From NCBI GenBank assembly GCA_047495785.1, contig JBLDXI010000009.1:4216001-4280000 (forward strand): DNA of 64,000 nt, given 5' to 3'. Source of the stretch: Lepidodermella squamata (Eukaryota > Animalia > Gastrotricha). Below are positions 16,509 through 48,773 of this stretch, one piece after another. Under the pieces are notes generated by a model. That model was not told the DNA's origin, searched no databases, and saw only the letters and a list, made by a program, of their open reading frames with translations. The position numbers were made by a program, and so were the translations under genes. The first letter of the stretch is position 1. Each line of letters starts with the position of its first letter.

Positions 16509-19235
16509 TCAAACCCGCGTCTCTTCGAACTGGTCCAATCGAAGCTTCATTTTACGTTCGACCGCGAGAATAGGATTCATTGAAATGGTTCTTAAAAGCT
16601 GCCATTTGAACCTCAAACACTTCGATCGACGGTCTCTCTGCTCAATATCGTGATAGATACGATCCAATTCTGACTTGAAAACCATACTATGTATGTCTTT
16701 GCTTGATACCGATTGGCACGTTGAGCAACCTATTTCGAGCGTTCTTAGCCTTGCACTTAGCATCTGCCGTTCAAGGTTAAGTTGTCGTATTCTGTCGACG
16801 ACAATGTTGACAAAAGTTACAACAGTTGGGTTGAGGTGGTTGTTTTCCAAATGAATCAACGCTTGATAGGCGCTGAAACCCGTGTCAAACATTTTAAGGC
16901 GCGGGCTGATGGTTGGTATGTCGAGTCTTGAAAAAATAACCGCTCCTACAACCACGGCTAAAACTATTCGAAGCAGGGCGCTTGCAACCCCGATGAAGAG
17001 GTTTTGGAAGAATGCCACATAGGCGTAGTTTGAGTAGCAGCGGGCATTATTAACAGCAACGATCCTACTGAATGGATTTGACGTGAAAACGAAAGTCGCA
17101 AATAGCATTTCAATGATTGCAATTCCAATAGTCACGCCTAGAACTGGACTATACAAAAATAAAGCTGGTAAAGGTTCTGCTTCAAGAGCTGGAAATTCGC
17201 TCACAGTAGAGATAACACTTGAACAATAATCCATTGCCCATAGCCATAGATCAAAGGGATTACTAATACAACCCCAATAACTGAGCCAATCAAGGTGAAG
17301 ACGAAAAGCTGGATGATGATAGCCCATGCGAACATCACGGATTGCAAGCCAATGAATTGAATAGCTCCGCCGATTATTCCTTGACAAGACAGAGCAGCTG
17401 GATGATCAATATTCTGATATTGCCCTCGATGAGCGCGTAGACGGTCGTTTCTAGAAGGTAATCGAATGTTAGGCAATTAAAAAAATGGATCGAAAAACCT
17501 GTAAGAGATCATAAGATGAGTCAACAGGTAAACTTGAAGTGAAGCCACGAGGCAGAGTGATGCCAAATTGCTATCTATAAATGCGATCGATTATAAAAAG
17601 CACGCTACGATGTCTCGAAACACTCACAGTACAAGCACCAGCAATGACCTGCGGCAATATCGCGAATCCATTTCACTACAAAGAGTTGAAGCTGTATGGT
17701 ATTTTGTTTTTATGTAATTGGAGCTATACCTTTCATTTCCACTTCTTCCACTGAATAATTTGATGTATTTGTGATGAGCACTTGCATCAGTGGGATCGAT
17801 AGTACAATCTTTATGGACATGTCAACTAATTCCGCAAGTAGTGGCAGCAGGTAAGTTCCGATAAACGCCAGGATATTTGCATCGATTAATATAATCTAGC
17901 AACATCGAATCTAAATAGGCAATTTCTTCGTCTTAGAGGGACTTACGTGATAGACAAAAATGCCACTGACAACTGCAGTGGAGATCATCACATGGGAGTA
18001 TCTGAAGTCTGCGATGATTTCAGATTTATTTCAGCTAAAGCTCAGCCAAACTTACAAGGCACAGCTTTGTAGAAAGCCAGCTTATCAAACAATTTGGCAA
18101 CCCCTTTGAGTGGCTGATCTGGAATCGCTTTCTTGAAAAGCTCTTGCACATACTTAGCTTCAGCAGTCTTCTTGAAGTCCAGTTCAGAATACAACGTTGA
18201 ATAGCTTGAGGCGAGCTTTAGATGGAAGAATCGAAACAATCCTGTGGCTAGTCTGTAAGGCAGAGCTATCGATAGGAAGCCCATTGATAGAAACGGGAAT
18301 GCAAGGCTGAATGTTTTGAGAATTATTTCAGTTGTCTGAAAATGCGAAAATATTTATGTCGATCTTTGGATCAAAGTCAATATTCGATTAGAGGGAGGTT
18401 GGGGCATAAGAAACTCGTATGGGGATATAGAATGGGATATGTAGAGTTTGGTTAAACAGCTCTAACTAACGTCGCTCATTCCTCCCGTTACATCGGCGTG
18501 GACTATTTCCTTGAGGATATCGGATCCTCTCACAACGGTAATACTCCAAACCCATGCAGTAGCGATAAAATAACCCACTGTTGTATCCGTGGACATTCCA
18601 GCAATGACAGGAAAGTAAATAATTGCGAAAATGGCGACGTTTATCATCACTATAATGGGATCTAGCCAGTCATCAACGCAGTCTGTGCTAATGAAGAGAT
18701 TTGAAGGCCGCGTAACAATGCGAATTCCTTCGTACGTAACCATTGCCCAAAAAGCGGCGTAGAAAAATCTCATACGACAAGGCTCCAAGATAGGGTATGG
18801 CTTTAAAATTCCAGGCCGACCGTCGCATATCATAATACACTTAGTCGCTCTTCTTTGAAGTAGAGTGAGGGCTATTACGCAGCTCGAAGCTGCTATTAGG
18901 AGAATAGTCGACGGCATCGAGTCTGGTGTTAACGTGAACTGTTTTTTCGCGCATTCTTTCGCCTTTTTTATAGCCTCGGCTGTTTCGTTTTTAGAAGCTG
19001 ATGTTTCATTTGTAACATTTGAAATTGCTGCCATGAGCTGCATAAGTATTTTCGCAGTGATTTTGCCAGACACGCCCACCATCTCTTCAATGTCCTGCAT
19101 GTTAACCGTGTAGTTGAATCCATTCTTCTTGGATAAATATGATAACGGCTCAATCTTCGTTGTTGCGGCATCGAAGTGCTCATGAGGAGTTGAATTCGGA
19201 TATGTAGAGTTTAGATATCCCTCGTCCTCTGGCAT
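16509..19235 (-). CDS. STRA6-like: STRA6/RBPR2-like multi-pass membrane receptor, copy 1
   Basis: QRR..CDGRPGILKP after TM1 (cf. STRA6 RRR..RGRPGLPSP); RLD..FDTGFSAYQALIHLENNHLNPTVVTF (cf. LDPGY.TY..FL..E..HP...F); C-terminal RFKWQLLRTISMNPILAVERK (cf. W.L.YTL..NP.L...RK). Multiple hydrophobic segments. Start MPEDEG is provisional. Confidence 0.85.
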
Positions 19236-21203: not shown

Positions 21204-21247
21204 TGTCCGATTGATTGTCGAGTCGCTGGACATGGCTCGGAAGTTGT

Positions 21248-22864: not shown

Positions 22865-25606
22865 TCAGACCCGCGTCTCTTCGAACTGATCCAATCGAAG
22901 CTTCATTTTTCGTTCGACCGCTAGAATAGGATTCATTGAAAGGGTTCTTAAAAGCTGCCATTTGAACCTCAAACACTTTGATCGACGGTCTCTATCAGCA
23001 ATATCATGATGAATGCGATCTAATTCCGTCTTGAAAACGTTAATACATATGCTCTCGCCTGAAACTGGTTTGCACGGTAAGCAGCCCATTTCGAGTTTTT
23101 TCACCCTTGCACTTAGCATCTGCCGTTCAAGGTTAAGTTGTCGTATTCTGTCGACGACAATGTTGACAAAAGTTACAACAGTTGGGTTGAGGTGGTTGTT
23201 TTCCAAATGAATCAACGCTTGATAGGCGCTGAAACCCGTGTCAAACATTTTAAGGCGCGGGCTGATGGTTGGTATGTCGAGTCTTGAAAAAATAACCGCT
23301 CCTACAACCACGGCTAAAACTATTCGAAGCAGGGCGCTTGCAACCCCGATGAAGAGGTTTTGGAAGAATGCCACATAGGCGTAGTTTGAGTAGCAGCGGG
23401 CATTATTAACAGCAACGATCCTACTGAATGGATTTGACGTGAAAACGAAAGTCGCAAATAGCATTTCAATGATTGCAATTCCAATAGTCACGCCTAGAAC
23501 TGGACTATACAAAAATAAAGCTGGTAAAGGTTCTGCTTCAAGAGCTGGAAATTCGCTCACAGTAGAGATAACACTTGAACAATAATCCATTGCCCATAGC
23601 CATAGATCAAAGGGATTACTAATACAACCCCAATAACTGAGCCAATTAAGGTGAAGACGAAAAGCTGGATGATGATAGCCCATGCGAACATGACAGATTG
23701 AAAGCCCATAAACCGAATAGCTCCGCCGATTATTCCACGACCAGACAGAGCCGATGGATAGTCAATGATCTCAAATTGACCTCGATGAGCTCGCATACGG
23801 TCGTTTCTATAAAATGGCTATCCAATTGTGTGATATTTCGAAAAAGGGTTCGAGAAACCTGTAAGAGATCATGAGGTGAGTCAATAGGTAAACTTGAAGT
23901 GAAGCCACGAGGCAGAGTGATGCCAAATTGCTATCTAAATGAGCTCGATTATTTTTAAGTAGGCTAAGATGTCGCGAAACACTCACAGTACAAGCACCAG
24001 CAATGACCTGCCGCAATATCGTGAATCCATTTCACTATACATAGAGTTACAGCTATACGGCATTTTGCCATTGCATTTAGTTGAAGCATTACCTGTCGTC
24101 TCCACCTCTTCTACTGTGTAGTTTGACGTCTTTGTGATGAGCGCTTGCATCATTGGGATCGATAGTACAAGCTTTATCGACATGTCAACGAATTCCGCAA
24201 GTTTTGGCAGCACGTAGGTTCCGATAAAGACCAGAAAATATGCATCGATAAAGATTATCTGATCGAATTTAATCTGAAATCAAAGCTATTTTGACTGAGT
24301 GGAACTTACGTAATAGACGAAAATACCACCGACAACTGCAGTAGAGATCATCACATGGGAGTATCTGAAGTCTGAGATAAATTTAGATGTATTGCAGCAA
24401 AATTTAACCCAAACTTACAAGGCACAACTCTGTAGAAAGTCAGCATATCAAACAATCTGGCAAATCCCGAAGGCGGCTGCTCTGGATGTGGTTTCTTGAA
24501 AAGCTGTTGGACATATTTAGCTTCAGCAGTATTTTTGAAGTCCAGTCCTGAATGCAACGTTGAATAGCTTGAGGCGACCTTTTGATGGAAGAATCGATAC
24601 AATCCTGTGGCTAGTCTGAAAGCCAGAGCTATCGAAAGGAAGACCATTGATAGAAACGGGAGAGCAAGGCTGAATGTTTTGAGAACGATCTGAGTTGTCT
24701 AAAAATGCGGAAATATTTATGTAAACCGGATGTTCAGTTAACATTAGAGAGGGTATTGGGGCTTGGGGCCCCCGAGAGACTTGTAGAATGGGAGATATGG
24801 AGTTTGGTAAAACAGGTTTAACTAACTTCATTCAATCGTCCCTTTCCATCGGCGTAGACTATTTCCTTGATGATATCGGATCCTCTCACAATGGTAATAC
24901 TCCAAACCCATGCTGTAGCGATGAAGTAACCCATTGTTGAATCCGTGGACATTCCAGCGATGATAGGAAAGTAGATTATCGCGAAAATTGCAACGTTTAT
25001 CAACACTATTATTGGTTTTAGCCAGTTATCAAAGCAGTCTGTGCTGATGAAAAGATTTGAAGGTTGCGTAACAATGCGAACTCCTTCGTACGTAACCATT
25101 GCCCAAAAAGCGGCGTAGAAAAATATCATTCGACAAGGCTCCAAGACAGGATATGGCTTCAGAATTCCGGGCCGGCCGTCGCAAATCAAAATACACTTAG
25201 TCGCTCTTCTTTGAAGTAGAGTGAGGGCTATTACGCAGCTCGAAGCTGCTACTAGAAGGATGGTCGATGGCATCGAGTCTGATGTGAGCTTGAACTGATT
25301 TTTCGCGCATTCTTTCGCCTTTCGTATTGCATCTGCTGTTTCGTTTTTAGCAGCCGAAGTTTCATCGGAAGTGTTGAAGTTTGTAGCATTCGAAAACGAT
25401 GCCATGATCTGGAGAAATATCTCCGCGGTGATTTTGCAAGCTACGTCCACCATCCCATCATTTCCCTGCATGTTGAATAGGCCGTTGAATCCGTCTTCAT
25501 CTGATAAATAAGACAAGGGAACAACTGTCGTAGTTGCGGCACTGGCGTACTCATCAGGGGTCGAATCTTGGTATGTTAAGTTGAGATTTTCCTCGCCCTC
25601 TAGCAT
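22865..25606 (-). CDS. STRA6-like: STRA6-like receptor, copy 2
   Basis: Closest paralog of copy 1, with the same motifs and intron positions; start MLEGEE. Confidence 0.85.
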
Positions 25607-25942: not shown

Positions 25943-28734
25943 TCATACTGTCGGCAATTCACTTTCAGGTGCAGGCTTTTGTTTACTGAACTGATCCAAG
26001 CCCAGTTTCATCTTCCTTTCGACAGCCAGAATAGGGTTCGAAGCCAATGTGCGTAGAAGGTGCCATTTGAACCGAATGCATCTGGACTTTCGATCCGCTT
26101 CCATCGCCTCATTATACCTCCTTTGGTATGCCAGATAGGCTGACGTAGCATTACTGGATTCTGTGCCTTGGCTTGAACTTTCATCCTCCGGTTTTAGGAT
26201 AAATACAACTTCCTCGCTCGCCAATGCCCCATTTTTGCCTCCATAACGATCAGTGAAGCAATCCCGCATCAGCCTTTGTTTCAGCTCCTGTTTCTCAGCA
26301 GTTTGTTTACGGATTCTGTCAATCACCATGTTGACAAAGGAGACCAATATTGGATTCAGGTGATTGTTCTCCAAGTGAATTAGCGCTTCATAAGCTTTAA
26401 AACCGGCGTCAAACTTTTTAAATCTTGGAGTTATAGTTGGCATGTCTAATCGAGCGAAAATGATAGCGCCAATGACTACGGCTAGAATGATCCGAAGTAG
26501 AGCACTGACAATGCCAACGAAGAGGCTTTTGAAGAACGACAAATAGGCGTAGCTTGAGTACCATCTAGGATTGTTCACTGAAACTGAGCGCCCACATGGC
26601 TCTGTCGTGAAAACGAAAGCAGCGATGATTTGCTGAAGGATGGCTATTCCTATGGTAACTCCAAGGGCTGGTCTATTATAGAGATGATATGAATAATGTG
26701 AAACAAATGGCAATGTAATTCTTACAAAATCGATAGAATCAATTGGATAATCCACAGACCGTATCCATACTTGAGCGGAATGATGAAAACGAAGCTGACA
26801 ACAAGTCCAATTAGGGTGAACAGGGCCAGCTGAATGACAACAGCCCAAGCAAAAATGATTGATTGGAAACCCATGTATCGAATGGCACCACCTATGACGC
26901 CTCGACCTGAAACTTCGGAAGGAGGAGCAATGACTTCGTAGATGCCCTTCTGAGCTCTCAAACGGTCCTCCCTGGTTGAATTAGATTCCGAAATTAGCAT
27001 AAGTAATTACAATAATTATTTGCTTTAACCTGTAGGATATCAGCATATGTAGAAGTAGAACAACTTGGAGCACAGATACAAGGCATAAAGCAGCTAAATA
27101 GCTGTCTGTAAAGAAAGAAGTTGATCAGGGATCAGAGTTAAGCTTGAACTTACAATAAAAGCTCCAACAATGACTCTCCGCAATAGCTGTGACCCATTTT
27201 ACTGCGATTGGGGGGATGAAACGCGAGATAGTCAAGTTATGCAATATTTCTACCTTTGTTTTCGACAGCTGTTAGGTTTGTAGTATTATATGCCTTGAAA
27301 ATCGACTCCTGAATGGCTGGTATCGAAAACACCACATCGATTTGTGAATTGACAAAAAAGGAGAGCAGTGGAATGACGTAAGTACCGAGAAATGTCAGAA
27401 AATATGCGTTTATAAAAATTAACTGAAAAAGAAAGGTTGATAATATGCTAGTTTTTAGACCATCTTACGTAGTAAACGAATAAGCCAGCAATGACAGCCG
27501 TTGATATGATGATGTGAGAATATCTGAAAACTAAAATTCGGCAATAATTCAGTCGTATTTCAGTTTCATGAAGATCTTACCCGGAACGCTACGATAGCGC
27601 GGAATCTTGTCAAGTATTTTCCATATTCCTGTGAGTTCAACTGGTGGAACAGGCTTCCGAAATAGATTCCTCACGTATTTTGCCTCAGCAGTTGTCAGGA
27701 AAGCAGGGACGGGTTCAATTGGTTCATACTTTGACCCCAAATAGCCTAGCCAGACTTTACGGATTCCGATGATCATTCGTATTGGAAGTGCAAATGATAG
27801 AAAGATCATCGAAATGAAAGGAATTGCGTATCTGAAAGTTGTTAATGCGAGCTGGGTGTCCTAGATTGCTTTTAAGGGTGAATCACTGGGATATATGAGC
27901 AAAATCACTTACATGCTGAAGTTTGCTATCGCCCCCATCTGCAACTTCAGCTATTTCTCTGATGATATCCCTTACCCTGATACCAACTATCGGCCAAGTC
28001 CAAGCTGTGGCAATCATGTAACCCAGAACCGAATCAGCCGCCATTCCGGCGATGATAGGGAAGTACAACACTGCGAAAATCAGCACATTAAGCAGGACGA
28101 ATATCGGTTTCACCCAACGATCAACGCAAGCTGTGCCAATGAATAATTCAGTTGGATTAGTTACAACTTGAATGCCTTCGTAGGTAACCATGGCCCAGAA
28201 AGCGGCGTAGAAGAACCGCATTCGACAAGGCTCGAGGATAGGGTACGGCTTCAGCACACCAGGCCTTCCGTCTGAAACGGATCGACACAGGTTCATACGT
28301 TGCTGGAGCCAAGTAAGCATCAGTACAAACGCAGTCGCCCCGATGAGTAAAACTATCGATGGGAGAGAGTGTTCCGTGAATTGCAGCTGGTTTTTCGCAC
28401 AACTCGCTGCCAGCAGAATCGCTTCTGCAGTTTCATTTTTGGGCGGATTATCACTACTGCTGGAGCTGTTGCTGAATGAAGCGATGATTTGCGTAATAAT
28501 GTCAACTCCAACTTCACAAATGACTTGCAACCCGCTCGTTTCGTTCTGGGGAGTCATTTCTGCGAGATCTTCGAACGACATCGTGGAGTAATCCGAAGAA
28601 TCACCGGTTGTAGTCTCGGTTAAATCGCCCGAGCCAGAAAAGTGAGTGGCCTCTTCGGTTGATAAAGGCAATAGTGTGTCGCTATCTAAGCCCAATGTAT
28701 AATTGCCCATCGTGAGAACTGACTTAATCATCAT
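25943..28734 (-). CDS. STRA6-like: STRA6-like receptor, copy 3
   Basis: DGRPGVLKPYPILEPCR; FDAGFKAYEALIHLENNHLNP; RFKWHLLRTLASNPILAVERK. The start may be 28734 or 28710. Confidence 0.85.
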
Positions 28735-34150: not shown

Positions 34151-36796
34151 TTAAGCATCTGATTGATTAGCAGCATTTTGCATTCTCTCCATTGCTATAC
34201 TTTTCATTTTACGTTCAACTGCTATCATAGGATTCATGACAAGTGTTTTGCACAGGGCCCATTTGAAAGAAATAGCCCGGTTTCTTCGTTTTTTCCGCTC
34301 TCCATCGTCACTAGCGACTGTTAAGAGAATTGACGAATCATTGGGACCAGGATCCGGTCCAATTCGATTTCCTCCCCCTATCGACTGTCTTGTTTGACGA
34401 ATCGCTGCCTGTAGCCGCGTTGTTCGCGCCGCTTCCAGCAGAATATTCACCATTGTTATCACAACAGGGTTGAGATGAGCATTTTCCAAATGAATCAACG
34501 ATTTGTAAACATTGTAACCGCTATCGAGAAAAATGAACTTTGGAGTAACTGTAGGCATATCCAGTCTTGAGAAAACTATTGCTCCAGTTATCAAGGAAAT
34601 GACCAATCTCAGTAAAGCGCCGATAATGCCGACGAAAATGTTTTTGAAGAAGGAGATGTAGATAAAGTTTGAGTAGGCCTTTGGATTTTTGATTGCCAAA
34701 GCCTTGTCTCGAACAAAGAAGAATGCAACGACTAGCATTTGAAAAATTGCCAGAGCAATCGTGACGGCCAATACTGGGCTGTTGTTGAAAATTGTTTGAA
34801 TGAAATTATCAATCAAATGAACAAAACTTACAGTAGAACGAGGACTTTCTCTATAATCCAGCCGCCGAATCCATAATGTAAGGGAATGATGACAACGTAA
34901 GCAACCAATAAGGCGATCAGAGTGAAGACAATGATTTGGATGAAACCTCCCCATACAAACATGACAGACTAAATACAAAATTCAATAAATGAAAATTGGA
35001 GGTCTAAGGACTTACTTGATATCCAACGTAACGAATGGCTCCGCCAATAACGCCCCGTGGAGCTGCATTCTTTCTCCCACCAGGTTCAGGAAAAGCTCCC
35101 CGATAAGCCTTAATCATGTCGCTTCTATAAGTAGGCAACAAATTTCCGACGAGGAAAAACTGAAGAAATGCAACCAGAATTATTGCAACAACATTCGAGT
35201 CTGTGAAATTGAAGAATTAGAAGAAATAAGGTAGCTAGAGCTCAAACTCACAGTAAAGACCCCAGAGGTAGGTCTTCCCTATTTTCAACCAGTACTTGTA
35301 CCGCTTTCGAAAGACGTGGAGGAACGAGAGTTTTTTCGAGCCGAGTAGCTTTGAAATGTCCTCTGCCGTTTCCATGTTACCGAAAACGGTATCTGCTATT
35401 TTCTCCAAGAGGGCCATAATCAAATCACCCATTTGCGCAGTTGTTACCAACGCAAAGACGTCCAGCAATATAACCTGAAGGTTTAGTTAACTTCAAATTG
35501 TTTCAAATTCACTGAATAATCAAACTCACGTAATAGAGGAAAACCATGCTTATCGCCACAGTTGAGGTCAGAGTTTGGGAGTATCGGAAATCTTAAGGAG
35601 AACATGAGATCAGAGCCTGAGAAGCTTTCAGTAACTTACAAGGGACATTCTGATAAAACTTCGCGATTATTGCTTTGAAGCCTTTCGATTTTGCCGTTGG
35701 ATTCGGTTTCGAAAATAGCTGTGTTACGTAGCGTCCTTCAGCTGTTTGCTTATAGTATGGATCTTTATTGAGGATATCGTACTAAATTCATACGCATGAG
35801 TTCATGAAGTATGCATCGCAAATAACTTACCAGAGATTTTTCGCTGAAATAACTTGTTCTCAGACCTTTAAAGAGCCGATAAGGCATGCTTATGGATAGG
35901 AACAGCATGAAGAGAAAGGGAGGGCCCCACGTTAGCACTGCTAGGACATTTTGAGACTGGAGACTAGTCAAATGACTTTCTTCTTTGGCGTAATCATCGA
36001 TATTCGCAATAATCTCTTCAGCATTGTCATAAAGCCTCAGAATAGTAAGAGTCCAAACCCACGTCGTAGCTATCAGATAACCTAAAGGAGTATCAGTTGA
36101 AAGTCCGCCAATCACTGGGTAGTAGGTAACTGCGTATATATGAATATTGACCAGGAGAATGATTGGCTTAGCCCAGTTGTTTTGCGTGCATTTGAGGCTG
36201 ATAATCATTGATGATGGGTCCAGAATGAATTGAATGCAGTCGTAGGCTATCATTGCCCAGAAAGCTGCGTAGACGAGACGAGCCCTGCAAGGTTCGACAA
36301 CTGGAAAGGGCCGAATAATAGCAGGCCTGGAGTCGTAGATACTAGACTTCAAGACGCCATATCGCCTCTTTTGAGTTACAGTAAGGATGAGCATGATAAA
36401 TACTGCGACTATTGTTAGCAGAATGTAGGGTAGGGAATTTTCGCTGAAGACGTTGTGCTCCTTACAGTACTTCTTAACAGCAGCAGTTTTATTGGCATCG
36501 CTGGACGATGAGAAGTCCGTCAACGAGAAACCCTCGTCTGATGGGTCTTCCTCAGCAGCTTCGGCCTCCAGGTCTCCGAGTGATATTCTAGACTGATCTG
36601 ATGATGATGATGATGATGAATCCTCGCTGGTAAATGTTGTGATCAGATTGGTGATCATCTGCGCTCCGGCTGAGCAGAATATTTGTACCGGCACAAAACT
36701 GGGTATTGAGTTAGAGTCTTCGACCATTTCGGACGCCTGGGATGAAGGAGTTTCTTCAGAAGTTTCGTTAGCGTAACTTTCTGCTAAATCAGCCAT
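34151..36796 (-). CDS. STRA6-like: STRA6-like receptor, copy 5
   Basis: SRPAIIRPFPVVEPCR; LDSGYNVYKSLIHLENAHLNP; SFKWALCKTLVMNPMIAVERK. Confidence 0.85.
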
Positions 36797-37255: not shown

Positions 37256-39768
37256 TCACTTTTCATTTTCGACGTTCTCTTCCTCCTCCCTCGATGCCTC
37301 TAGAACAGCTTTACGCTGTAAAGCGAGTATTGGATTCATAGCCAGAGTTTTGCAGAGTTGCCATTTGAAGCTAATACGCTTCTTCGTAGCAGAAGGTTCG
37401 GAAAATTTCTCCATGTCGATCGCTGAGTCGTCTCCAGCAGAATTTATGCTTGTAACAAGCAGATCTTCCTGATCAGGGACTTTCAGCTTCGATTCTGGGT
37501 GTATTTTATTTGACCGAGCTGAGCCTCCCCGCGAAAGGTTGAGCTTAGGTATTTTCGACGGATAAACAGACCTTCTGGATTCAACAAGCAGAATATTGGC
37601 GAAAGTCAGCATTGTCGGGTTCAAATGAGCATTTTCAACGTGAATCAGTGCTTCGTAAGCTTTGAAGCCAGCGTCCAAAAATTTGAATCTCGGAGTCATG
37701 AGTGGCATGTCGAGGCGTGAATAGGCCATAGCTCCAGTAATTACGGAGAATAAAATTCGAATCAAAGCCCCGACCAGCCCAACGAAAAGGTTGCGGTAGA
37801 AGGAGATGTAGGCGCAATTTGAGTAGCCCCGTGGATTCTTTACTGCTAGAACTTTGCCACAGGGTTCGGCTGTGAAGCAAAAGGTGATCACCAGGATTTG
37901 AACAATAGTCAGGCCTATGGTTATTCCGATTGCGGGTCTGATAATTGATAATCAGGATTTAAGCGCTTAAACCTTTTTGAGAGAAAAAGACTTACAAAAT
38001 CACGAAAATTCTATTGATAATCCATTGTCCGAATCCATAGTGCACCGGGAGAATGACCACATATGTGACAACAATGGCTATCATAGTAACCACTGCGAGC
38101 TGAATGATGCATCCCCAGGCGAAGATTACAGACTATGATAAAGCATTATCGTTATCGACTAAAATTGAAGAAATATTGAATGGGAAAATCTTACCTGGTA
38201 TCCCATGTAGCGAACAGCCCCGCCAATCAACCCTCGTGCAGACGATTCGCTCGGCGGCGCTAAGACTCTGTAAGTTCCCTTGTAGGCTCGAAGCATGTCG
38301 TCTCGATATGCCGGCAGAAGTGTGATCAAAAGGTAAAATTGGATTAATGTCACAAGGATCAAGGCAAAGACATTGCAATCTATACAATGCTGATTATTTT
38401 CCAAATAGGTTTCATCCTATCTCCACTTACATAAACCGCCCCAGATGTAGTGCTTTGCAATAGTGATGATCCTATCAGTTTTGTTTTGAAGACCGTCAAG
38501 AAATCTAGCACGGTCATCGTGTAAAGCATCAGCGTATTCCTTAGCTGTCTCCGTCGAATCGAAAAATTGCTGTAAAATAACCTCGACTAATTGGCTGAAT
38601 GTCGGCACGTAATACGTGAAAGCTTCCACCAAATAGTAACAGTTCAAGTATAGGACAAAATAAATCAGTACACTGCTGACTGCTAACGTCGATAAGATTG
38701 TGTGGGAGTATCTAAAATCTACAAAATACGCAAAAATTAGGAATCAATTTGCTGTTTTAAAGCTTACAGGCCCTGTTGTTATAGATATTTTTGCATCCTT
38801 TGACTTCAATGTCTTCCCTTTTGAAAAGTTCCACAACGTATAGTCCTTCCGGAGTTAAAGTGTATGGAGGTCGATCGACGGAAATGTCAAACTAAAATAA
38901 AAAAGTATTATTAAATTAGTATAAGCTGCATCAATTTTACCATGCTTTTTTCTTTTAAGCAGTTCCTGCAGAATCCTCGCAGAAATCGAAAAGGCAACGC
39001 CAAGCACAAGTAGAGAAGAAAAAGGAACGGAGGAGCTCTCGACATGAAAGATAGAACAGCCTCGGCCCTCCCATTTAACGGGTCCCCATCCTCAGCATTC
39101 ATGATCGCAGACTTGATTTCTAACGCATTATCATAACCTCGAATGAATGTAATGGTCCATATCCAAGCAGTGGCGATCAAGTAACCGATTGGAGTCTCAG
39201 TAGACATACCGCCAATTATTGGGAAATACATCACCGAGTAAATCTGCACGTTTGCCAACACAATGAGGGGTTTTGCCCATGGAATATCTTCACATTGCAA
39301 GCTGATGATAAGATCTTTAGGCTCCGTCATAATTTGAATCCCGTCGTAAGCAACCATCGCCCAGAAAGCAGCATAGGAGAACCGAGATCGGCAGGGCTCT
39401 ATTAAGGGAAATGGGCGGAGCATAGCTGGCCTCCAGTTATAGGGATGTTTGGCTCGTCTCCTTTGTGTACACGTCAGGGCGATCATTGCAATAGCTGATG
39501 CCATCATCAGGATTATGTAAGGAAGCGACTCATTGCTGTATAGAGCTTTCGTACTGCTGCATTCCTTGTTTTTCGTCGCGTTCGATGGTGTTTTTGGCTC
39601 GTCATCATCAAAATATGAGTCATATGTAATTGTTGATGGGGAATTGTTATCAGCGAGGGTTTCAGCTAAATCTCCGCCATTGGACAGATATTGCTGGATC
39701 TCAACGTAGAGATTAGCCAACGCTCGCGAGTAGATCTCAATCGGAACACGACTATCAATGGCTACCAT
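37256..39768 (-). CDS. STRA6-like: STRA6-like receptor, copy 6
   Basis: Start MVAIDSR; WRPAMLRPFPLIEPCR; LDAGFKAYEALIHVENAHLNP; SFKWQLCKTLAMNPILALQRK. Confidence 0.85.
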
Positions 39769-39909
39769 AATGTCAAATCCAACAAAATGCGAGAATGCGA
39801 ACCCAATTATGAGGACGGTATGTCTATTTTTCACTAACGGCGTGTTTTGTTGCTACGGTGGAATATTTATCGATTTACATTAATTTATTCATAAACATTC
39901 GAGTCATTC

Positions 39910-42629
39910 TCACGCAGTAATCAATGGCTTATTATTCTCTATCACAAGATCAATACGGTCTACCTTTAGTTTGATTTTTCTTTCTACGGCGAGAATTGGG
40001 TTCAGAGCAAGTGTTTTCAGCAGCAGCCATTTAAATCGAGTGCATTTTCGTTTTCGTTCGAGTTCGATCAGCCCGAGGTATTCAGCTTCGAAGTCGTTGA
40101 CTCCATAATCTACCTCAACGCCCACCGATGAAGTTGAACACGGGTTGCTGTTGAACACTGATGATTTCGAGTTGACGCGGTCCATTTTAGCTCGAATTAT
40201 TTCTCCAAATTTTCTCTTTTCCTTTGCTTGATCTTTCAAGCGGTCTAGGACTAGCTGAATAAAGCTTTTCATCGTCGGATTTAGATGGGCATTTTCGAAG
40301 TGGATAAACGTTTCGTAGGTCTTGAACCCAGCGTCGAATCTTATGAAAAATGGAGTGAGGGTAGGCATGTCGAGCCGAGAGAAGATTATCGCTCCGAAAA
40401 CTACGGACAGAATTAGGCGAATCAGAGCGCTTACAATGCCGACAAAAAGGTTCTTGAAAAAGGAGATGTATGCGTAAAGGGAAAACCCGCGAGCATTATT
40501 GACCAGAATAATCTTGCCGCATGGCTCAATGGTGAAGAGGAAAGCGACAATCAGCTGCATCAGTAAACCCAATCCGATTGTCACGGCAAGAGCGGGCCTT
40601 AAATAATCATTTAGATTCATTTACAGGTGAAATGAGTTATAACATACAGAAGTGCGAATAGGTAGGCTATGATCCATGCTCCATAGCCATAAATCAGAGG
40701 TATTACGAGAACGCAACCAATTATAACACCGGCCAGAGTGAAGACGATCAATTGAATCACGCAGCCTGGAATTACTCTCCAGTAAAAATTAATTAATTGT
40801 GTGAATGTAATAATCATTTACCCCATGCAAACATAACACATTGAAATCCCATGTAGCGGACTGCACCTCCGAGAACTCCTCGGCCGGAGAATGTGCTTGG
40901 GTGGCGAAGAACTTCATACTTCCCTTGAGCTGCTCTCAGCCGGTCGTTCCTGTTTCAAGAGAAAATACTGGGAATCGAGGCCAGCATAGTTCCGATCTTA
41001 CCTGTATGCGATTAAAAGAGTAGCAACTAGCACTACTTGTAAAATTGTGGTGATAACTAAAGCAGCCACATTGCTGTCTAAATACATTAGAGAGAACAAT
41101 TATACTTTTTAGGGGAATGAAACTGAATGGAACTTACAGAACAAGCAATCGATATGTGAAAATGCAATTTTAATGATCCAATGCGTCTTTTCGTCGACCT
41201 TTGCTTGGGTGGCATTGAATGACTCATTCGTGCCTTTGAGCAGCGTTTTGCGAATGATCCTTGAAAAAACTGGCTGGCGCAGCAGAGGTTCAATAACATC
41301 TGACACAATCATGTAAAGAAAGGGAATCAGACTCTCTTTCACCGCTAGAAGCAACCGAATGTTCGTGAAAATGATCTTTAAATGAATCAATCAATGTTCA
41401 TTGTTAAGAATCTCACTTGAAACTTACGTAATAGACGAATACAATGCTTACAGAGACAGTAGAAATAATGACTGCCGAATATCGGAAATCTGTTGCAGTG
41501 ACAAAGGTGACTCAATATGTTAGGCTGAGGTTACACTGCTCACATTTCTTATTTTCGTAAAATCTGAGCTTTTGCATCAGCTTTTTTATTCCTTTCAGGG
41601 GCTCAGCTGGCTCCTCCCGCCGTTTGAATAGCTCGTTGACATAAGATGCATCGGGACTTTCTGCTATCAGCTTGCTAACCTTTGAATACTAAAGAGAGAC
41701 ATGGATCGTGGATGGTTAATGCTGTTATCCCCTACTTTTGATCTGATTTTCAGGCGAAAGAATTTCCACAATCCTTTAGCCACGGAATAAGGCATTGAAA
41801 TGCATAAGAATGCCATGCAAATGCAGGGAATCGCAACTGTGAATACTTGGAGTGTGATTTCAGTATCCTGTAAGAAGATTATTTGGGTAGTATCATCGAG
41901 CATTGACAATTCGCTAACCTCGTCTAAAACGTTTGAAGACTTCTTATAGAGGTCATCGATAATTTGAGCAACTCGCCGTATAGCGATGCCCCAAATCCAG
42001 GCAGTCGAAACCGTATAGCCGAGAGTGGAATCAGACGACATACCGGCAAGTACAGGAAAGTAAAGGATTGCGAAGAGTAAAACATTGACTAGTACAATCA
42101 AGGGCTTCTCCCATTTGTCCAAACAGATTACACTAAAAATCCCAATTCAGATAGGTTTTGTGATTCCTCGGGATTACCTAATGAACAAATCGTTCGGCGA
42201 GAATAGGATCTGTATTCCATCGTAAGCAACCATTGCCCAAAACGCGGCATATGAGAGTCTCATTTGTCCAGAATCTAACATCGGGAATACTGCCAATATC
42301 CCAGGCCGGCCATTGAACAATCGAGGGAACATTCTGCGCCTTCTTTGCAGGAAAAACATGATTGGAATAACAGACGCGGCGCATATAAGTAATATCAAAG
42401 ACGGTAGAGAGTCGTCAGATAATTGAAACTTGTTCTTTCGGCACTTGGCTGCCACTATAGCAGGATCTTCCTGTTCTTCTTCCTCATCCGTTGAGTTGTC
42501 TGCAGTTCCGTAAGAATTGATCACAGTTAACAGAGTGTCGAATATCTGTTGAAACATGATTGATTCATCACTCTGAGATGTTTGAAGAATATCAATGGCA
42601 TCTGCTACAAATTCAGAATTCAAAGCCAT
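39910..42629 (-). CDS. STRA6-like: STRA6-like receptor, copy 7
   Basis: NGRPGILAVFP; FDAGFKTYETFIHFENAHLNP; RFKWLLLKTLALNPILAVERK. Confidence 0.85.
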
Positions 42630-42927
42630 GGCAGCCTAAAACAACAAAATAGGAATAATGAAACAATTCCTCAGCTTTTTGTTGCATAATACGGTCTATG
42701 AAGTGCTTTTCAGGTAGAGCAATCACTAACAGCTACACGAAAATATTGATCAAATGATTTTCGGGATACTGCGTCACGATATTCGCTTTAATTGCAGCCA
42801 TGCGCGGTCGATCGATTTTTGGCCAAGAAAGAGGTACAAAATTATTATTAACGGTGCAAAAAAATCGATACAATTTATTGAGTATGTATTCAATCCACGA
42901 CATTTAAACTACGGAAAAAAAGAATTT

Positions 42928-45857
42928 TCAGACGGCAACTTCGGTATCCTTTTTGCCCGGCCTGGCAAACTGATCAAGTTGCAGCTTCATTTTTCTTTCA
43001 ACAGCTAGGATAGGATTCATCGCCAGAGTTTTTAGCAGAAGCCACTTGAATCGCTTGCATCTCTGAATTCGATCAGCCTCGATCAATCGTTGATACTCTT
43101 CCTCCGGTGATTCGATATGATTGATCACATAAGTCAGATTGCTGCGGGCGCTTTCTTTCGGATTTCTCGGCGTTCGAATTTCGCGGAGCCTCCTTAACCG
43201 ATCCCTCAACTTTCTTCTCTCCTCCTTTTGTTCCGCTATCCTCTCATGGATCATATGGGTGAAAGCAATCATTGTCGGGTTCAGATGAGCATTCTCGAAA
43301 TGGATGAATGTCTCGTATGTCTTGAAGCCAGAGTCGAATTTGATGAAAAACGGCGTTAATGTTGGCATGTCAAGCCGCGAGAAAATGATGGCGCCGAATA
43401 CGACCGACATTACAAGGCGGAGGATTGCACTGACGATGCCGACAAAGAGATTTTTGAAGAATGCAACGTAGGCGTAGAGTGAGAAGCCACGTGGATTGTT
43501 GACCATTATCACCCGGCCGCATGGTATCACAGTGAAGAGGAATGCAACCATGAGCTGCATAATGATTCCAAGGCCTAATGTTACCCCTAAAGGAGGCCTG
43601 GCGAAAACAAATAATTTAGTGAAGATTTGATACATCCGATGAATGACTTACAAAAGGGCTAGTATGTAGTTTATTATGAAGCCCCCATACCCGTGCGCCA
43701 CAGGAAGGATTATTACACAGCCGATAATGACCCCGGCCAGGATGAATACAATCAGTTGAATGACACAACCTGAAAAATCATTATAAGTCATTTTATTGAG
43801 TTGAATCGAGGCTTTCCTACCCCAAGCAAACATGACGCATTGAAACCCCATGTAACGAACAGCTCCTCCAATAACTCCTCGACCTGAAAACATTGAAGGA
43901 GGTCTAATCACAGAATATTTCCCCTGCGCAGCTCTCAATCTATCATTCCTAAAATATCAAAAAAGTAGGAAAACTGGAAACAAACATTATGGAAACTCAC
44001 TTGTAAGCATTGAACAACGTTAATACTAAGATGATTTGTAAAATCGTCGTAATAATTAGGGCCAATAGATTCGAATCTGAAGAATATTTTAGTCTTAGAG
44101 GGTATGCATTTTGATAGCTCTTACAGTAAAGGCAGTCGATGTGGGCGTAAGCAATGTTTATAATCCACATGGTTTTCTCCTCGACTTGAGCCATTGTTTC
44201 GTTTAGTGTCATATTTGACTTCCTCAGAAGAGTTTTCTGAATGACTCTTGAGAAGACGGGCATCCTCAGAAGCGGTGAGATCAATTTGTCGACAAGCCCG
44301 CGAAACAAAGGAACGAAAGCTTCATTGACAATTAACAATATCCGGATGTTCGAGAAAATGATCTAATAATAGGGTAATTTAATAAAATAAGTCTAGAAAT
44401 CGATACTCTTACGTAATAAATGAAAACAGTGCTTATAGCAACTGTTGATAACAGGATAGTTGAGTAGCGAAAATCTGGTGTAATTATGAAAAGTTGTTTG
44501 CCCGGCATCTCGAGATTAATAAAGCTTACATGGTGTTCTAACGTAAACCTTGGCTAGAAACTTTTTGATGCCTTTCAGCTCCTGAGGCTGACCTTTCCGT
44601 TTAAGCATTTCTATGACGTATTTACCCTCCAAAGTCTCCTTGCAACTCAGCTCCTTGCTGATAGCTGAATACTGCAAAAATAAAACATTGTAGGAGAAGG
44701 AGCAAGCTTTCTCAACCATTTTCACCTTTGAATTTAGCATTCCTCTGTAGTATTTGACGAGACCCAATACGAGCTGTATCGGTAAACTTATGCAGAGGAA
44801 GAGCATGCATAGACACGGTAGGGCGACTGTAAAGACCTGAATTGTTCTTTCCGTGGTCTAGATATCATAAAGTTGGCAATGTGAGACATATATGGTATCG
44901 GCAAACCGGATTTAGAAGATTGGAATCATTGGTCTGAATATCATGAAGGACTTGCTCAACCCTCCTGACTGCCAAGCCCCATGTCCAAGCCGTTGAAATG
45001 GCATAACCTAGGATAGAGTCCATGCCCATTCCGCCTATTATCGGAAAGTAGAGTAGTCCGAAAAGCAATACGTTCACCAAAACTATAAGTGGCTTCTCCC
45101 ATCTGTCTAAGCAGAGCAAACTAGAAAATCATAAAATTTTAGATCCTTTATTTTGATTAAATTGGAGCTAATTTCACCTGAGAAATAGATTATTCCGGTC
45201 AAAAATAATCTGAATTCCATCGTAAGCCACCATAGCCCAGAAGGCGGCTGAGGAAAGTCGGAAATTGCCGAGATCGATGATCGGATACGGCCTTAAGAGT
45301 CCTGGCCTTCCTCCAGCCAATTTTAAGAACGAGTGTCGTCGCTTTTGTAAGAAAAACATAAGCAAGATCACAGACGCCGCGGCTATAAGCAGTATGATGG
45401 ATGTTAAAGAATCTCGATTGAATTGGTACTTATTCTCGGCGCATTTCCGCGCGATTTCGGCCGGGCTGTCCTCGCTATCCCCAGAATCCTCGGGTGCGCT
45501 CTCCGTGGTTGAGTCAGTGCTGTTATCAGAATCATTATCTTCACCCGAAGAACCGGACGACGATATGAATTGCATGGCAATATCGAAAATTTGTTGGAAC
45601 ATCAACGACTCATCGCTTCTGCCTTCGTTGCAGTCAACTGGTTCACTTGCAAATTCATTGAAACTGCTGACAATGGAACCCAGGGTGGACGTCTTTAGAT
45701 CCGCATCCTCTTGTTCGGGTAAGCTAGAATTTGCCGTAGTTGTCATCGGAACTACGTTGCCTGGCATAGGAATTAGCTGGCTTGTATAGATATACCAAAT
45801 TTTAGAAGTAACTATGAGTATGCACGATGTAGATAAGTTCGAATCGAACAAGCCCAT
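42928..45857 (-). CDS. STRA6-like: STRA6-like receptor, copy 8
   Basis: GGRPGLLRPYP; FDSGFKTYETFIHFENAHLNP; RFKWLLLKTLAMNPILAVERK. Start is provisional. Confidence 0.85.
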
Positions 45858-46020
45858 CGATCGGTGGAATGCATAGTCAAAGCATTAAATATGCATGATT
45901 TTACGCAGCCAGGTATGTGCTCAATCTTTGATGGCTCAACAAATCGAAAATGGCACTGAATTCTTTATTTCATTTGTAACATAGCATAGTAGTGAACGAT
46001 AGCGGCGTCTTATTGATGAG

Positions 46021-48773
46021 TTACTGCTTATTTTCCTTGTCCTTATTTTCGTCTGTTTTCTTTTCGCCATCCTTCTCCGCAAATACATCCAATTTCAGCT
46101 TCATTTTTCGCTCAACAGCTAACATCGGGTTGAGAGCCAGAGTTTTCAATACATGCCATTTGAAACGTTTGCATCTCTTGAGCCGGTCCGCTTCAATAGC
46201 CGCCTTGTAGTCTTCGTCGTCGAACTCAACCACCGAATCGCCGTTCTTGCTTGAAGAAGCTGCATTAGCCGGTCTACTCCTTCGACGCATTAGTTCTCGC
46301 AGTTGTGCTCGTTCCTCGGCTTGTTCGACAATCCTCGCAGTTACAATTTGCATGAAAGCTGTCATCGTTGGGTTGAGATGCGCGTTTTCAAAGTGGATAA
46401 ACGCCTCGTAAGTTTTGAAACCAGCGTCGAATCTGATGAAAAACGGCGTGAGAGTTGGCATGTCCAAACGTGAGAAAACAATGGCACCGCAAACGAGGGA
46501 CATTATAAGGCGCAATAGAGCTGTTACAAGTCCGACGAACAAGTTTTTGAAGAAGCAAACGTAGGCATAGATTGAGTAGCCCCGCGGGTTGTTGGCCAAT
46601 ATCACTCTGCCACAAGGTATCGCTGTGAAGAGGAATGCTGACATTAGCTGTTGCAGTATACTTAGGCCAAATGATACAGCTATAGCAGGTCTGAAACAGA
46701 CGGCGAATACATCTCAATATAAGAGAAATCTCCGGTTTTTACATACAAAAGAGCTAGGATGAAGTCTATGACAAATTTGCCATAACCATATGCCACAGGT
46801 ATGATGATAACGCAGCCGATAATTACACCAGCCAGAGTGAATAGGATCAATTGGAAGATGTAACCTGGATCAAAATAATTAATCTACATCAAAAGTTAGA
46901 ATTAGGAACATCATCTCATACCCCAAACAAACATGACGGCTTGAAAGCCCATGTAACGAACCGTACCCCCTATCACACCACGGCCGGAAAACAGTTCAGG
47001 TGGTCGAACTACCTCGTACTGACCTCTGAAAGCTCGCATTCGGTCGTTCCTAGAGAAAAATGGTGAATTATCGGATGACATCAGGCTGAATTTACTTATA
47101 AGCTGCGAATAGAGTGAGGACAAGGACAATCTGCAGGAGGACGCAGAGGATCAGCGCTGCGAGGTTGCTGTCTGAAAACCCCAAGGTACAAAAGTAGTTT
47201 AAGCAAATTTGATGATTTCTGAAACTTACAATAAAAACAGTTGACATGAGCCTTCATTACGCTCAGGATCCAGTCGACTTTTTTCGGCAAGAAATCGGGC
47301 GTGTAATCTGATGCATTTTTCAGCAGGGTTTTGTTAAGAATCTTCTGGAACACCCCAGTTTCTAGAAGAGGCCTAGTTACGTCATCGACCAAGGAATAGC
47401 CCAGCGGAATGGCGTAACGACCCGTCCAAACTAGAGCGTAAATCTCGACGAATGTAACCTGAGTATAAAAAAAGTCAATAAAAATGTGTTGCAGCAATAT
47501 ATTAGTTACGTAGTAAAGAAAAACAATGCCAACGCCAACTGTCGATAGAAATACGGTCGAATATCGGAAATCTGAAAATGACGCTTCGTTCGATGAAATT
47601 CAGGTTGATATCCGAAGGCTTACATGGGGTATTCTTTAAAAACATGATGCGAGCCAAAAACTTCTTGATGCCAGTAGGTTCCACCTTGGGCGGCCGCTTC
47701 TTGATAAGCTCTTGCACGTACTTGAACTCTGGTGTTTCCGTGTATATCGGCATTTTGTTAACCGGTGAGTATTTCGATGGTGACTTGCCGACGTAATACA
47801 AGTAAAGCCCGCGAACCACCTCAAAAGGTAGGGCAACGCATAAATAGGCCATACAGACTACTGGTATCGCGAAACTGAGAATTTGTAAAGCCGTTTCTGC
47901 AGCCTGAATGAAAGATGGATTCGAGAAAAATAGAAGAGAATCGGCAACGACTTACAAAATCTAATCCACCTTCGTCATCCGTCATCAACTTATCGGCGAT
48001 CTGCTTCGCGCGTCTAACGGATAGCGCCCACATCCACGCGGTAGAAATCATGTATCCCAGCGTCGAATCGGCCGCTTTACCGGCAATGACCGGGAAATAC
48101 AGTATAGCGAAAATCAAGACGTTGCACAGGACGATGAGAGGTTTAACCCATTTGTCGAAACAAAGCAGGCTGGTGAAAAATTGTTAAACACTATTTTCTG
48201 TGGTAATTCAGTGGCTACTCACCCAATAAAGAGGTTTGATCGATCGAAGATAATCTGAAGACCATCGTAAGCAACCATCATCCAAAAAACCATGTAGGTG
48301 AATCGAAAGTGACCTGGGTCTATTATAGGGTAAGGCCTCAGCAGGCCCGGGCGGCCTCCAAAGAGTCCTCTCGCAATATTTCGCCGTCTTTGCAGCAAAA
48401 ACATCAGAGAAATGACAGTCGCTGCGGTGATCAGCAGCGTAACAGATGGCAACGAATCGTCCGTAAATGCAGCGTCGTTTTTCTTGCATTTCGCGATCTC
48501 CTTCATTTCTTCCATTTCCTCATCTTCCTCATCATCTCCGGAAAATGTGTCGAAAACAGGTTTCACTGCCTCGAACAGCGCCCTAACTGCCGCCATCGTC
48601 TCTTCAGGGTCAAGGCCCAGCATGCTGAATGAGAACGGCGTGTTCTCAGTCGTTTGGAACGGATTGATGTAGGTGACATTTTCAGAATCTGGGTCGTAGT
48701 TATCGTAATAATCTGTGACATTCGGATCAGCCGAGTCGAGCGAAGTAACTACTATAGGAGAATTATCCGACAT
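46021..48773 (-). CDS. STRA6-like: STRA6-like receptor, copy 9
   Basis: GGRPGLLRPYP; FDAGFKTYEAFIHFENAHLNP; RFKWHVLKTLALNPMLAVERK. Confidence 0.85.

What the first reader, a model, noticed from the sequence alone, without database searches (positions are those of the whole stretch)
16509..48773. Nine-gene tandem array of diversified STRA6-like receptors
Seen: nine apparently intact, same-strand, intron-conserved paralogs in 32 kb. Established: vertebrate STRA6/RBPR2 are low-copy receptors for retinol-binding protein RBP4, STRA6 is a dimer, and its C-terminal W-x-L-x-x-T-L-x-x-N-P helix binds calmodulin; RBP4 is a vertebrate protein. Here that helix and the GF/Y..Y..IH.EN.HLNP segment are conserved in all nine copies, while the outward-facing parts diverge. 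Inference: a lineage-specific repertoire of Ca2+/calmodulin-coupled lipid-uptake or lipid-sensing receptors with different ligands. Heterodimers could add combinatorial diversity. This looks more like a chemoreceptor or immune-receptor expansion than a housekeeping transporter.
Basis: partly seen in the sequence, partly recalled or inferred. Interest (0 to 1): 0.85.

Follow-up and report, generated by a model that had tools for sequence, protein, structure and literature searches.

The report
Nine tandem STRA6-type receptor genes
A small invertebrate carries nine old, intact, side-by-side genes for relatives of the vertebrate vitamin A uptake receptor STRA6. This is an unusually large, lineage-specific expansion of a known family whose job outside vertebrates is still unknown.

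Summary
Nine minus-strand, multi-exon genes (747-819 aa) lie between 16509 and 48773. All have complete reading frames and GT-AG introns of about 50 nt. All match Pfam RBP_receptor at both ends. All keep the helix homologous to the calmodulin-binding BP2 helix of zebrafish STRA6. A fold of one N-terminal exon matches solved STRA6 (Z 14.2). RNA contigs show spliced transcripts of copies 7 and 8.

The nine form one clade, so the expansion is lineage-specific. It is old: synonymous sites are saturated in every pair except c1/c2. There are no pseudogenes.

Corrections:
- Only three intron positions are shared by all nine.
- One unrelated gene and repeat debris interrupt the array.
- c4 has an extra 5' exon.

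The "diversified ligand repertoire, chemoreceptor-like" reading is not supported. The variable parts are the outer tail, two outer loops and also a cytosolic linker. The same parts vary among mollusc homologues. The one young pair shows purifying selection plus gene conversion.

Smaller clusters exist elsewhere: Lineus has 2, amphioxus 4, and Ptychodera has 3 within 250 kb.

Other notes report large lipocalin arrays, an untested lead for carriers.

Verdict: real, ordinary in kind, unusual in number.

The parts
16509..19235 (-). c1, STRA6-type gene, 8 coding exons, 760 aa (clade A)
   Evidence: Spliced model without internal stop. Pfam PF14752 matches the first and last exon.
22865..25606 (-). 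c2, STRA6-type gene, 8 coding exons, 765 aa (clade A). 82% aa identity to c1.
   Evidence: dS 0.26 and dN/dS 0.36 against c1.
25943..28734 (-). c3, STRA6-type gene, 8 coding exons, 810 aa (clade A)
30765..33648 (-). c4, STRA6-type gene, 11 coding exons, 781 aa (clade B). It includes an extra 5' coding exon at 33648-33556 with three NxS/T sites, followed by a 53-nt intron.
   Evidence: The upstream exon was found.
34151..36796 (-). c5, STRA6-type gene, 7 coding exons, 779 aa (clade C)
37256..39768 (-). c6, STRA6-type gene, 6 coding exons, 747 aa (clade C)
   Evidence: The fold of its first exon matches the STRA6 N-terminal domain: 5sy1_A, Z 14.2, rmsd 3.2 A, 167 residues aligned.
39910..42629 (-). 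c7, STRA6-type gene, 10 coding exons, 750 aa (clade B). Transcribed and spliced.
   Evidence: RNA contigs of run X1 join exons across introns 42133-42177, 41868-41918, 41689-41735, 40950-41001 and 40766-40821. Loose ends mark the intron at 40598-40647. A SMART cDNA oligo marks a 5' end at 42603. Model.
42928..45857 (-). c8, STRA6-type gene, 10 coding exons, up to 819 aa (clade B). The start codon is uncertain: 45857, 45767 or 45746.
   Evidence: Low RNA depth over the gene. A loose end at 44000 carries the first bases of the next exon, which confirms intron 43949-44000.
46021..48773 (-). c9, STRA6-type gene, 9 coding exons, 775 aa (clade B)
39952..40071 (-). BP2-type (calmodulin-binding) helix of c7. 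The homologous segments in the other copies are 16527-16646, 22883-23002, 25988-26107, 30807-30926, 34184-34303, 37286-37405, 42967-43086 and 46081-46200.
   Evidence: Alignment A2 has invariant F, K, W, T, N, P, A, R and K. Its profile hits only 5k8q_B (the STRA6 BP2 peptide bound to calmodulin) and 5sy1_A in the PDB.
16749..17290 (-). A 542-nt tract of c1 that is 100% identical to c2 at 23105-23646. It spans the last intron. Gene conversion is the likely cause; assembly smoothing is the alternative.
   Evidence: dS is about 0 in alignment columns 600-720, against 0.2-0.75 elsewhere.

Best explanation
This is an old, lineage-specific tandem expansion of one ancestral STRA6-type gene (Pfam RBP_receptor) into nine genes that are all still functional.

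Shown:
- Each gene encodes a canonical STRA6-like multi-pass membrane protein.
- The N-terminal tail and the long TM6-TM7 loop are rich in N-glycosylation sites, as expected for outward-facing parts.
- The hydrophobic core is conserved.
- The cytoplasmic BP2 helix, which binds calmodulin in zebrafish STRA6, is conserved.

Inferred from the vertebrate proteins:
- Each protein works as a calmodulin-associated dimeric gate.
- The gate passes a small hydrophobic molecule (retinoid-like or another lipid) between an extracellular carrier protein and the cell membrane or cytosol.

The nine copies fall into three ancient clades (c1-c3; c4, c7, c8, c9; c5, c6). They have most likely divided the work among tissues, stages or carriers. 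Which of these applies is not known.
For: - Family identity: PF14752 matches all nine first exons and all nine last exons. A profile of the last exons hits zebrafish STRA6 5SY1 at E 3e-15. The fold of the c6 first exon matches 5sy1_A at Z 14.2, 5 units above the next hit.
- BP2 helix: the profile hits only 5K8Q_B and 5SY1 in the PDB.
- Topology: 43 N-glycosylation sequons fall in 1784 predicted outer residues, against 7 in 5147 elsewhere (odds ratio 18). About ten hydrophobic segments are present.
- Function retained: nine complete reading frames despite saturated synonymous divergence (pS 0.76-0.86, pN 0.27-0.46).
- Separate genes: AATAAA lies 12-182 nt after the stop of c3 to c9.
- Transcription: spliced RNA of c7 and c8.
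- Single origin: the nine are monophyletic with SH-aLRT 100 among 89 family members.
- Not an assembly duplicate: DNA run X2 covers the c7-c8 stretch that was laid at even depth.
Against: - No ligand, carrier, dimer or calmodulin binding was tested; the mechanism is transferred from vertebrate STRA6.
- RBP4, the vertebrate ligand carrier, is vertebrate-specific (PMC3184775, PMC5821490).
- Expression is shown only for c7 and c8.
- The fold of the C-terminal exon alone gave no informative match.
- Full-length folds were not made.
Confidence: 0.72

Rival explanations
1. The array is a fast-diversifying repertoire of lipid-sensing receptors with different ligands, like chemoreceptor or immune-receptor expansions. 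Heterodimers would add combinatorial diversity.
For: - There are nine paralogues in tandem.
- The outer tail and loops have the lowest conservation: 0.19-0.31, against 0.56-0.65 in the core.
- Other, unchecked notes report large lipocalin arrays in the same genome that could supply diverse carriers.
Against: - The duplicates are ancient and there are no pseudogenes or fragments.
- For c1/c2, dN/dS is 0.36 overall and at most 0.65 in any window.
- The same regions are variable among 17 mollusc homologues, and the big outer loop is relatively better conserved among the nine (0.31 against 0.15).
- A cytosolic linker is just as variable (0.18).
Confidence: 0.15
2. Several of the nine are decaying or silent copies, and only one or two genes do the work.
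For: - RNA evidence exists only for c7 and c8.
- The c8 start codon is uncertain.
- Some donor sites are weak, for example GTTTTT in c1.
Against: - All nine keep full-length frames, canonical splice sites and every invariant family motif, although synonymous sites are saturated.
- The weak donor sits at the same intron position in c1, c2 and c3.
Confidence: 0.06
3. The proteins act mainly as cytokine-like signalling receptors, as proposed for vertebrate STRA6 with JAK2/STAT5, rather than as transporters.
For: Vertebrate STRA6 is reported to signal through a phosphotyrosine in the C-terminal helix (my recollection of the literature; see also PMC12953553).
Against: The tyrosine of the zebrafish LLYTL stretch aligns with K or R in all nine copies. 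The transport core is the best conserved part.
Confidence: 0.04
4. The array is an assembly artefact, made of haplotype or collapsed duplicates.
For: c1 and c2 share a 542-nt tract that is 100% identical.
Against: - Copies are only 33-60% identical in protein, and 82% for c1/c2.
- Intron sets differ between clades.
- An independent DNA run covers the c7-c8 stretch that was laid at even depth.
Confidence: 0.02

Closest known systems
Vertebrate STRA6 (zebrafish; PDB 5SY1 with calmodulin, 5K8Q BP2 peptide with calmodulin)
   Same: - The Pfam family is the same.
- The N-terminal five-helix membrane domain has the same fold (Z 14.2).
- The C-terminal core, including the ...EN.HLNP block, is conserved.
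- The homologous BP2 helix keeps W, L, L, T, L, N and P.
- The tree group that holds the nine scores far better against 5SY1 (213-224 bits) than STRA6L or amphioxus proteins do (73-131 bits). The nine therefore look like co-orthologues of STRA6 proper. This is tentative.
   Different: - Nine tandem genes instead of one.
- Identity to STRA6 is low: 15% over the aligned N-terminal domain in the fold match.
- The tyrosine in BP2 is replaced by K or R.
- The outer loops cannot be aligned.
- The vertebrate carrier RBP4 is not expected in this animal.
STRA6L / RBPR2 and the four amphioxus Stra6l genes (Albalat et al. 2011, PMC3184775)
   Same: Same superfamily. Amphioxus also has several copies, two of them on one scaffold. 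Branchiostoma lanceolatum has two adjacent PF14752 genes.
   Different: In my tree they fall in the other main group. Four loosely placed genes are reported, not nine in 32 kb.
Predicted 'stra6-like' genes of spiralians and hemichordates (Lineus longissimus, Haliotis, Pecten, Saccoglossus, Ptychodera flava)
   Same: These are the closest sequences found, at up to 133 bits on the last exon. Small clusters exist: two genes 7.5 kb apart in Lineus, and three same-strand genes within about 250 kb in Ptychodera.
   Different: All are uncharacterised predictions. Their clusters are smaller and much looser. The nine form their own long-stemmed clade (stem 1.62 changes per site).

Membership tests
STRA6 / RBP_receptor family (PF14752) | Profile match above the curated cut-off over both halves of the protein | tested here: met
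   All nine last exons match (best E 7.5e-27) and all nine first exons match (best E 1.4e-11). The cut-off is 25 bits.
STRA6 / RBP_receptor family (PF14752) | Sequence similarity to the solved STRA6 structure | tested here: met
   The profile of the nine last exons hits 5sy1_A at E 3.2e-15. It is the only PDB hit.
STRA6 / RBP_receptor family (PF14752) | N-terminal membrane domain (TM1-TM5) with the STRA6 fold | tested here: met
   The c6 first-exon model has pLDDT 79 and pTM 0.68. The Foldseek top hit is 5sy1_A (probability 1.00). VIA-align gives Z 14.2, rmsd 3.2 A and 167 aligned residues; the next hit has Z 9.2.
STRA6 / RBP_receptor family (PF14752) | C-terminal membrane domain with the STRA6 fold | tested here: inconclusive
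   The c7 last exon folded alone has pLDDT 81 but pTM 0.35. Only generic helical hairpins were matched. This is a fragment without its partner helices.
STRA6 / RBP_receptor family (PF14752) | N terminus outside, C terminus inside, about nine membrane helices plus one intramembrane helix | tested here: met
   The averaged hydropathy shows about ten hydrophobic or amphipathic segments. N-glycosylation sequons are concentrated 18-fold in the predicted outer tail and loops. This is indirect evidence.
STRA6 / RBP_receptor family (PF14752) | Calmodulin-binding BP2 helix in the cytoplasmic tail | tested here: met
   Met at sequence level only. The 40-residue profile A2 hits only 5k8q_B (E 0.012) and 5sy1_A in 177,635 PDB sequences. 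Binding itself was not tested.
STRA6 / RBP_receptor family (PF14752) | Homodimer; binds holo-RBP4 and moves retinol | not testable with these tools
   No multimer modelling was available and no assay could be run. RBP4 is reported absent from amphioxus and Platynereis (PMC3184775, PMC5821490).
Vertebrate STRA6 as a JAK2/STAT5 signalling receptor | Phosphorylatable tyrosine in the C-terminal helix (LLYTL in zebrafish) | tested here: not met
   That position is K or R in all nine copies. The role of the tyrosine is from my memory of the literature.
STRA6L / RBPR2 orthogroup | Groups with vertebrate STRA6L in a family tree | tested here: not met
   Oryzias STRA6L (P0070) and amphioxus (P0045) fall in the other main group. 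That group scores 73-131 bits against 5SY1, while the group holding the nine scores 213-224 bits. No vertebrate STRA6 sequence could be put in the tree, so this is tentative.
Birth-and-death receptor arrays (chemoreceptor or immune type) | Many recent duplicates, pseudogenes and positive selection in the ligand-facing parts | tested here: not met
   There is one recent pair only. There are no pseudogenes or fragments. Synonymous sites are saturated elsewhere, and dN/dS for c1/c2 is at most 0.65 in every window. Positive selection in the old pairs cannot be tested because of saturation.

The most novel reading that the evidence does not exclude
The nine receptors are matched to the expanded secreted lipocalins that other notes report in this genome. 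That would be a carrier-and-receptor system for delivering different small lipids (retinoids, carotenoid products, sterols or pheromones). It would show that the lipocalin-STRA6 axis, thought to be a vertebrate invention (RBP4-STRA6), is older and has been multiplied here. The nine would then be co-orthologues of STRA6 itself.
Probability: 0.15. Interest if true: 0.8.

Novelty: new member of a known kind. Interest (0 to 1): 0.48.

Why it matters
STRA6 is known almost only as the vertebrate receptor for retinol-binding protein. Papers on amphioxus and on an annelid state that invertebrates lack a STRA6 orthologue. Here an invertebrate keeps nine STRA6-type genes under long-term purifying selection, all with the calmodulin-binding helix. 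The family must therefore have an important function that does not depend on RBP4.

The compact array, with genes of about 2.7 kb, gives nine natural variants of one scaffold. They could be used to ask what invertebrate STRA6 proteins carry and which outer parts set specificity. If the receptors pair with the animal's many lipocalins, the origin of the RBP4-STRA6 system would move to before the vertebrates.

Tried and rejected
1. Guide proteins from other phyla gave false introns in variable regions in my spliced aligner. I replaced them with the RNA-supported c7 model as guide and corrected c2 exon 5, the c3 last exon, the c8 first exon and the c4 5' exon by hand.
2. The fold of the c7 last exon alone gave no informative PDB match by Foldseek or VIA-align.
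3. A single-sequence PDB search with the c7 tail found nothing. The profile of the nine tails did.
4. The papers of Chen 2016 and Young 2021 are not held.
5. Word-based protein searches reached only 7 and 14 relatives and no vertebrate STRA6. STRA6 versus STRA6L orthology therefore rests on the tree plus bit scores.
6. The bacterial promoter/terminator scan is irrelevant to a eukaryote.
7. Pfam found nothing in the open reading frames of the c1-c2 gap. It found only a sub-threshold SUR7 hit in the gene between c3 and c4.
8. I looked for a tenth copy or fragments and found none.
9. I looked for an in-frame intron in the odd N terminus of c8. None fits, so its start stays uncertain.
Full report
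**What is there**

tblastn with the two largest open stretches of the first copy finds nine co-linear pairs of hits on the minus strand between 16.5 and 48.8 kb, and nothing else in the 64 kb. A later search with all nine proteins at E 1 finds no tenth copy or fragment.

The two stretches match Pfam PF14752 (RBP_receptor) at E 9e-23 and 3e-11. The genes are split by many very short introns.

**Gene models**

I wrote a protein-to-genome spliced aligner. Guides from other phyla were too distant to give clean models.

Public run X1 is labelled only as a guess at RNA. It proved to be RNA for three reasons:
- Its contigs skip five stretches of 45-56 nt that end in CT..AC on the plus strand, which is GT..AG on the gene strand.
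- These joints are absent from the DNA run X2.
- One contig ends in a SMART cDNA oligo at 42603.

The five joints, plus loose ends at 40597/40647, 41428 and 44000, fix most of c7 and one intron of c8.

With the RNA-supported c7 protein as guide, all nine copies gave in-frame models. I corrected these by hand. All models have complete reading frames. The coordinates, exon counts and lengths are:

| Copy | Coordinates | Coding exons | Length |
|---|---|---|---|
| c1 | 19235-16509 | 8 | 760 aa |
| c2 | 25606-22865 | 8 | 765 aa |
| c3 | 28734-25943 | 8 | 810 aa |
| c4 | 33648-30765 | 11 | 781 aa |
| c5 | 36796-34151 | 7 | 779 aa |
| c6 | 39768-37256 | 6 | 747 aa |
| c7 | 42629-39910 | 10 | 750 aa |
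| c8 | 45857-42928 | 10 | up to 819 aa |
| c9 | 48773-46021 | 9 | 775 aa |

Further points on the models:
- Introns are GT-AG and 45-62 nt long. The exceptions are the first intron of c1 (135 nt) and of c2 (128 nt).
- c4 has an extra 5' coding exon (33648-33556).
- The start of c8 is uncertain.
- AATAAA follows the stop of c3 to c9 within 12-182 nt, and the next start codon lies 141-720 nt further on. These are therefore separate, tightly packed transcription units.
- The joined models were built only inside scripts. They were never typed or sent to a search or fold tool.

**Relations among the nine**

Protein identity is 33-60%, and 82% for c1/c2. There are three clades: A (c1, c2, c3), B (c4, c7, c8, c9) and C (c5, c6).

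Only three intron positions are common to all nine. The others are present or absent by clade. "Intron-conserved" is therefore only partly right, and introns have been gained or lost since the duplications.

Synonymous differences are saturated in every pair (pS 0.76-0.86) except c1/c2, while pN is 0.27-0.46. The duplications are old, and every copy has stayed open and conserved, which means purifying selection on all nine.

For c1/c2, dS is 0.26 and dN/dS is 0.36. No 60-column window exceeds 0.65. A 542-nt tract that includes the last intron is 100% identical (c1 16749-17290 = c2 23105-23646). This points to recent gene conversion.

**Family membership**

- All nine first exons and all nine last exons hit PF14752.
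- A profile of the last exons finds one PDB sequence, zebrafish STRA6 5SY1, at E 3e-15.
- A profile of the 40-residue C-terminal helix finds only the BP2 peptide of STRA6 crystallised with calmodulin (5K8Q chain B, E 0.012) and 5SY1 itself. BP2 is the region through which calmodulin binds STRA6 (PMC10871162, citing Young 2021).
- The helix's W, N, P and R are nearly invariant in 42 family members from cnidarians to fish. The motif is therefore a family feature and not special to this array.
- The tyrosine of the zebrafish helix is K or R in all nine.
- The first exon of c6, folded with 34 aligned sequences (pLDDT 79, pTM 0.68), has 5sy1_A as its top Foldseek hit. It reaches Z 14.2 (rmsd 3.2 A, 167 residues), against 9.2 for the next entry.
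- The last exon folded alone packed poorly (pTM 0.35) and matched nothing informative.
- Hydropathy gives about ten hydrophobic segments.
- N-glycosylation sequons are 18-fold enriched in the predicted outer tail and loops. This fits the STRA6 topology.

**Place in the family**

A profile search of 1.84 billion representatives gave 765 hits. The best reached only 133 bits (Lineus, Haliotis, Pecten, Saccoglossus and others). Neither this species nor close kin are in that library.

In a tree of 89 proteins the nine form one clade (SH-aLRT 100, stem 1.62). It sits in a group with spiralian and hemichordate proteins. The other main group holds cnidarian, amphioxus, Lymnaea and fish STRA6L proteins.

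Zebrafish STRA6 scores 224 and 213 bits with members of the first group, but 73 and 131 bits with fish STRA6L and amphioxus. I therefore tentatively take the nine as co-orthologues of STRA6 proper.

The family reaches sponges and a choanoflagellate.

**Is the divergence of the outer parts special?**

It is not. Mean pairwise identity by region among the nine, compared with 17 mollusc homologues:

| Region | Nine copies | 17 mollusc homologues |
|---|---|---|
| N-terminal tail | 0.19 | 0.17 |
| Second outer loop | 0.26 | 0.24 |
| TM6-TM7 loop | 0.31 | 0.15 |
| Cytosolic linker before BP2 | 0.18 | 0.13 |
| Core | 0.56-0.65 | 0.38-0.60 |
| BP2 helix | 0.65 | 0.42 |

The pattern is the family's ordinary constraint pattern. 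One inner segment is as variable as the outer ones.

**Are such arrays common?**

Partly:
- Lineus has two adjacent genes.
- Branchiostoma lanceolatum has two adjacent genes, and amphioxus has four in all (PMC3184775).
- Ptychodera flava has three same-strand genes within about 250 kb, plus two elsewhere.
- Rotaria and Owenia show single genes within the flanks seen.

I found no paper on a larger expansion. Nine genes in 32 kb is the largest and tightest set I saw. My survey was small.

**Context**

Other notes of this scan describe the genome as that of a small, short-intron freshwater invertebrate with many tandem families. They report large arrays of secreted lipocalins. RBP4 is a lipocalin, so these are candidate carriers. 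I could not check them.

**Verdict**

- The family assignment, the calmodulin helix and the lineage-specific origin are supported.
- The chemoreceptor-like, ligand-diversified reading is not supported by what can be tested.
- The mechanism (a calmodulin-bound dimeric gate for a carrier-borne lipid) is inferred from vertebrate STRA6.

Noticed in passing
window 29015-29997 (minus strand), between c3 and c4: An unrelated small multi-exon gene for a hydrophobic protein interrupts the array. Its only Pfam hit is a sub-threshold SUR7/PalI match (E 0.005).
   Followed up: partly
window 19300-22800, between c1 and c2: A 3.6-kb gap holds open-reading-frame fragments on both strands. By eye they resemble the region just after the reverse-transcriptase domain of LINE elements. 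Pfam found nothing.
   Followed up: partly
window 16749-17290 and 23105-23646: A 542-nt tract is 100% identical between c1 and c2 and spans an intron, while the rest of the two genes is 70-90% identical. Recent gene conversion is the likely cause; assembly smoothing is the alternative.
   Followed up: yes
all nine genes; alignment columns: Intron presence differs by clade: two positions occur only in clade B, one only in clade A and one only in clade C. Every intron is about 50 nt long. The array is a clean natural series for studying intron gain and loss among paralogues.
   Followed up: partly
window 42603: An RNA contig ends here in a SMART cDNA oligo. That is 26 nt downstream of the first ATG of c7 (42629). 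The real start codon of c7 may therefore be the next in-frame ATG at 42557.
   Followed up: no
window 42256/39907 and 44577/45189: Contigs of DNA run X2 (organism B) show two odd joints: one that goes back 2350 nt and one that skips 611 nt. These may be structural variation or cross-joins between paralogues in the contig builder.
   Followed up: no
L006, L007, L008 (Ptychodera flava CM083803.1, 12.45-12.70 Mb): Three same-strand PF14752 genes lie about 100 kb apart. This is an independent loose cluster in a hemichordate.
   Followed up: partly
P0020 (Owenia fusiformis), P0057 (Monosiga brevicollis), P0046 (Corticium candelabrum): PF14752 proteins exist in an annelid, a choanoflagellate and a sponge (P0057 checked by hmmscan, P0020 by a precomputed Pfam hit, P0046 by my profile hit and its NCBI name). 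A paper on Platynereis states that annelids lack STRA6 (PMC5821490). The family seems to be older than animals.
   Followed up: partly
model mc722892e3e56 (c6 first exon): After STRA6, the next structural matches are the TMD0 domains of MRP2/ABCC1 transporters, at Z about 9.
   Followed up: no
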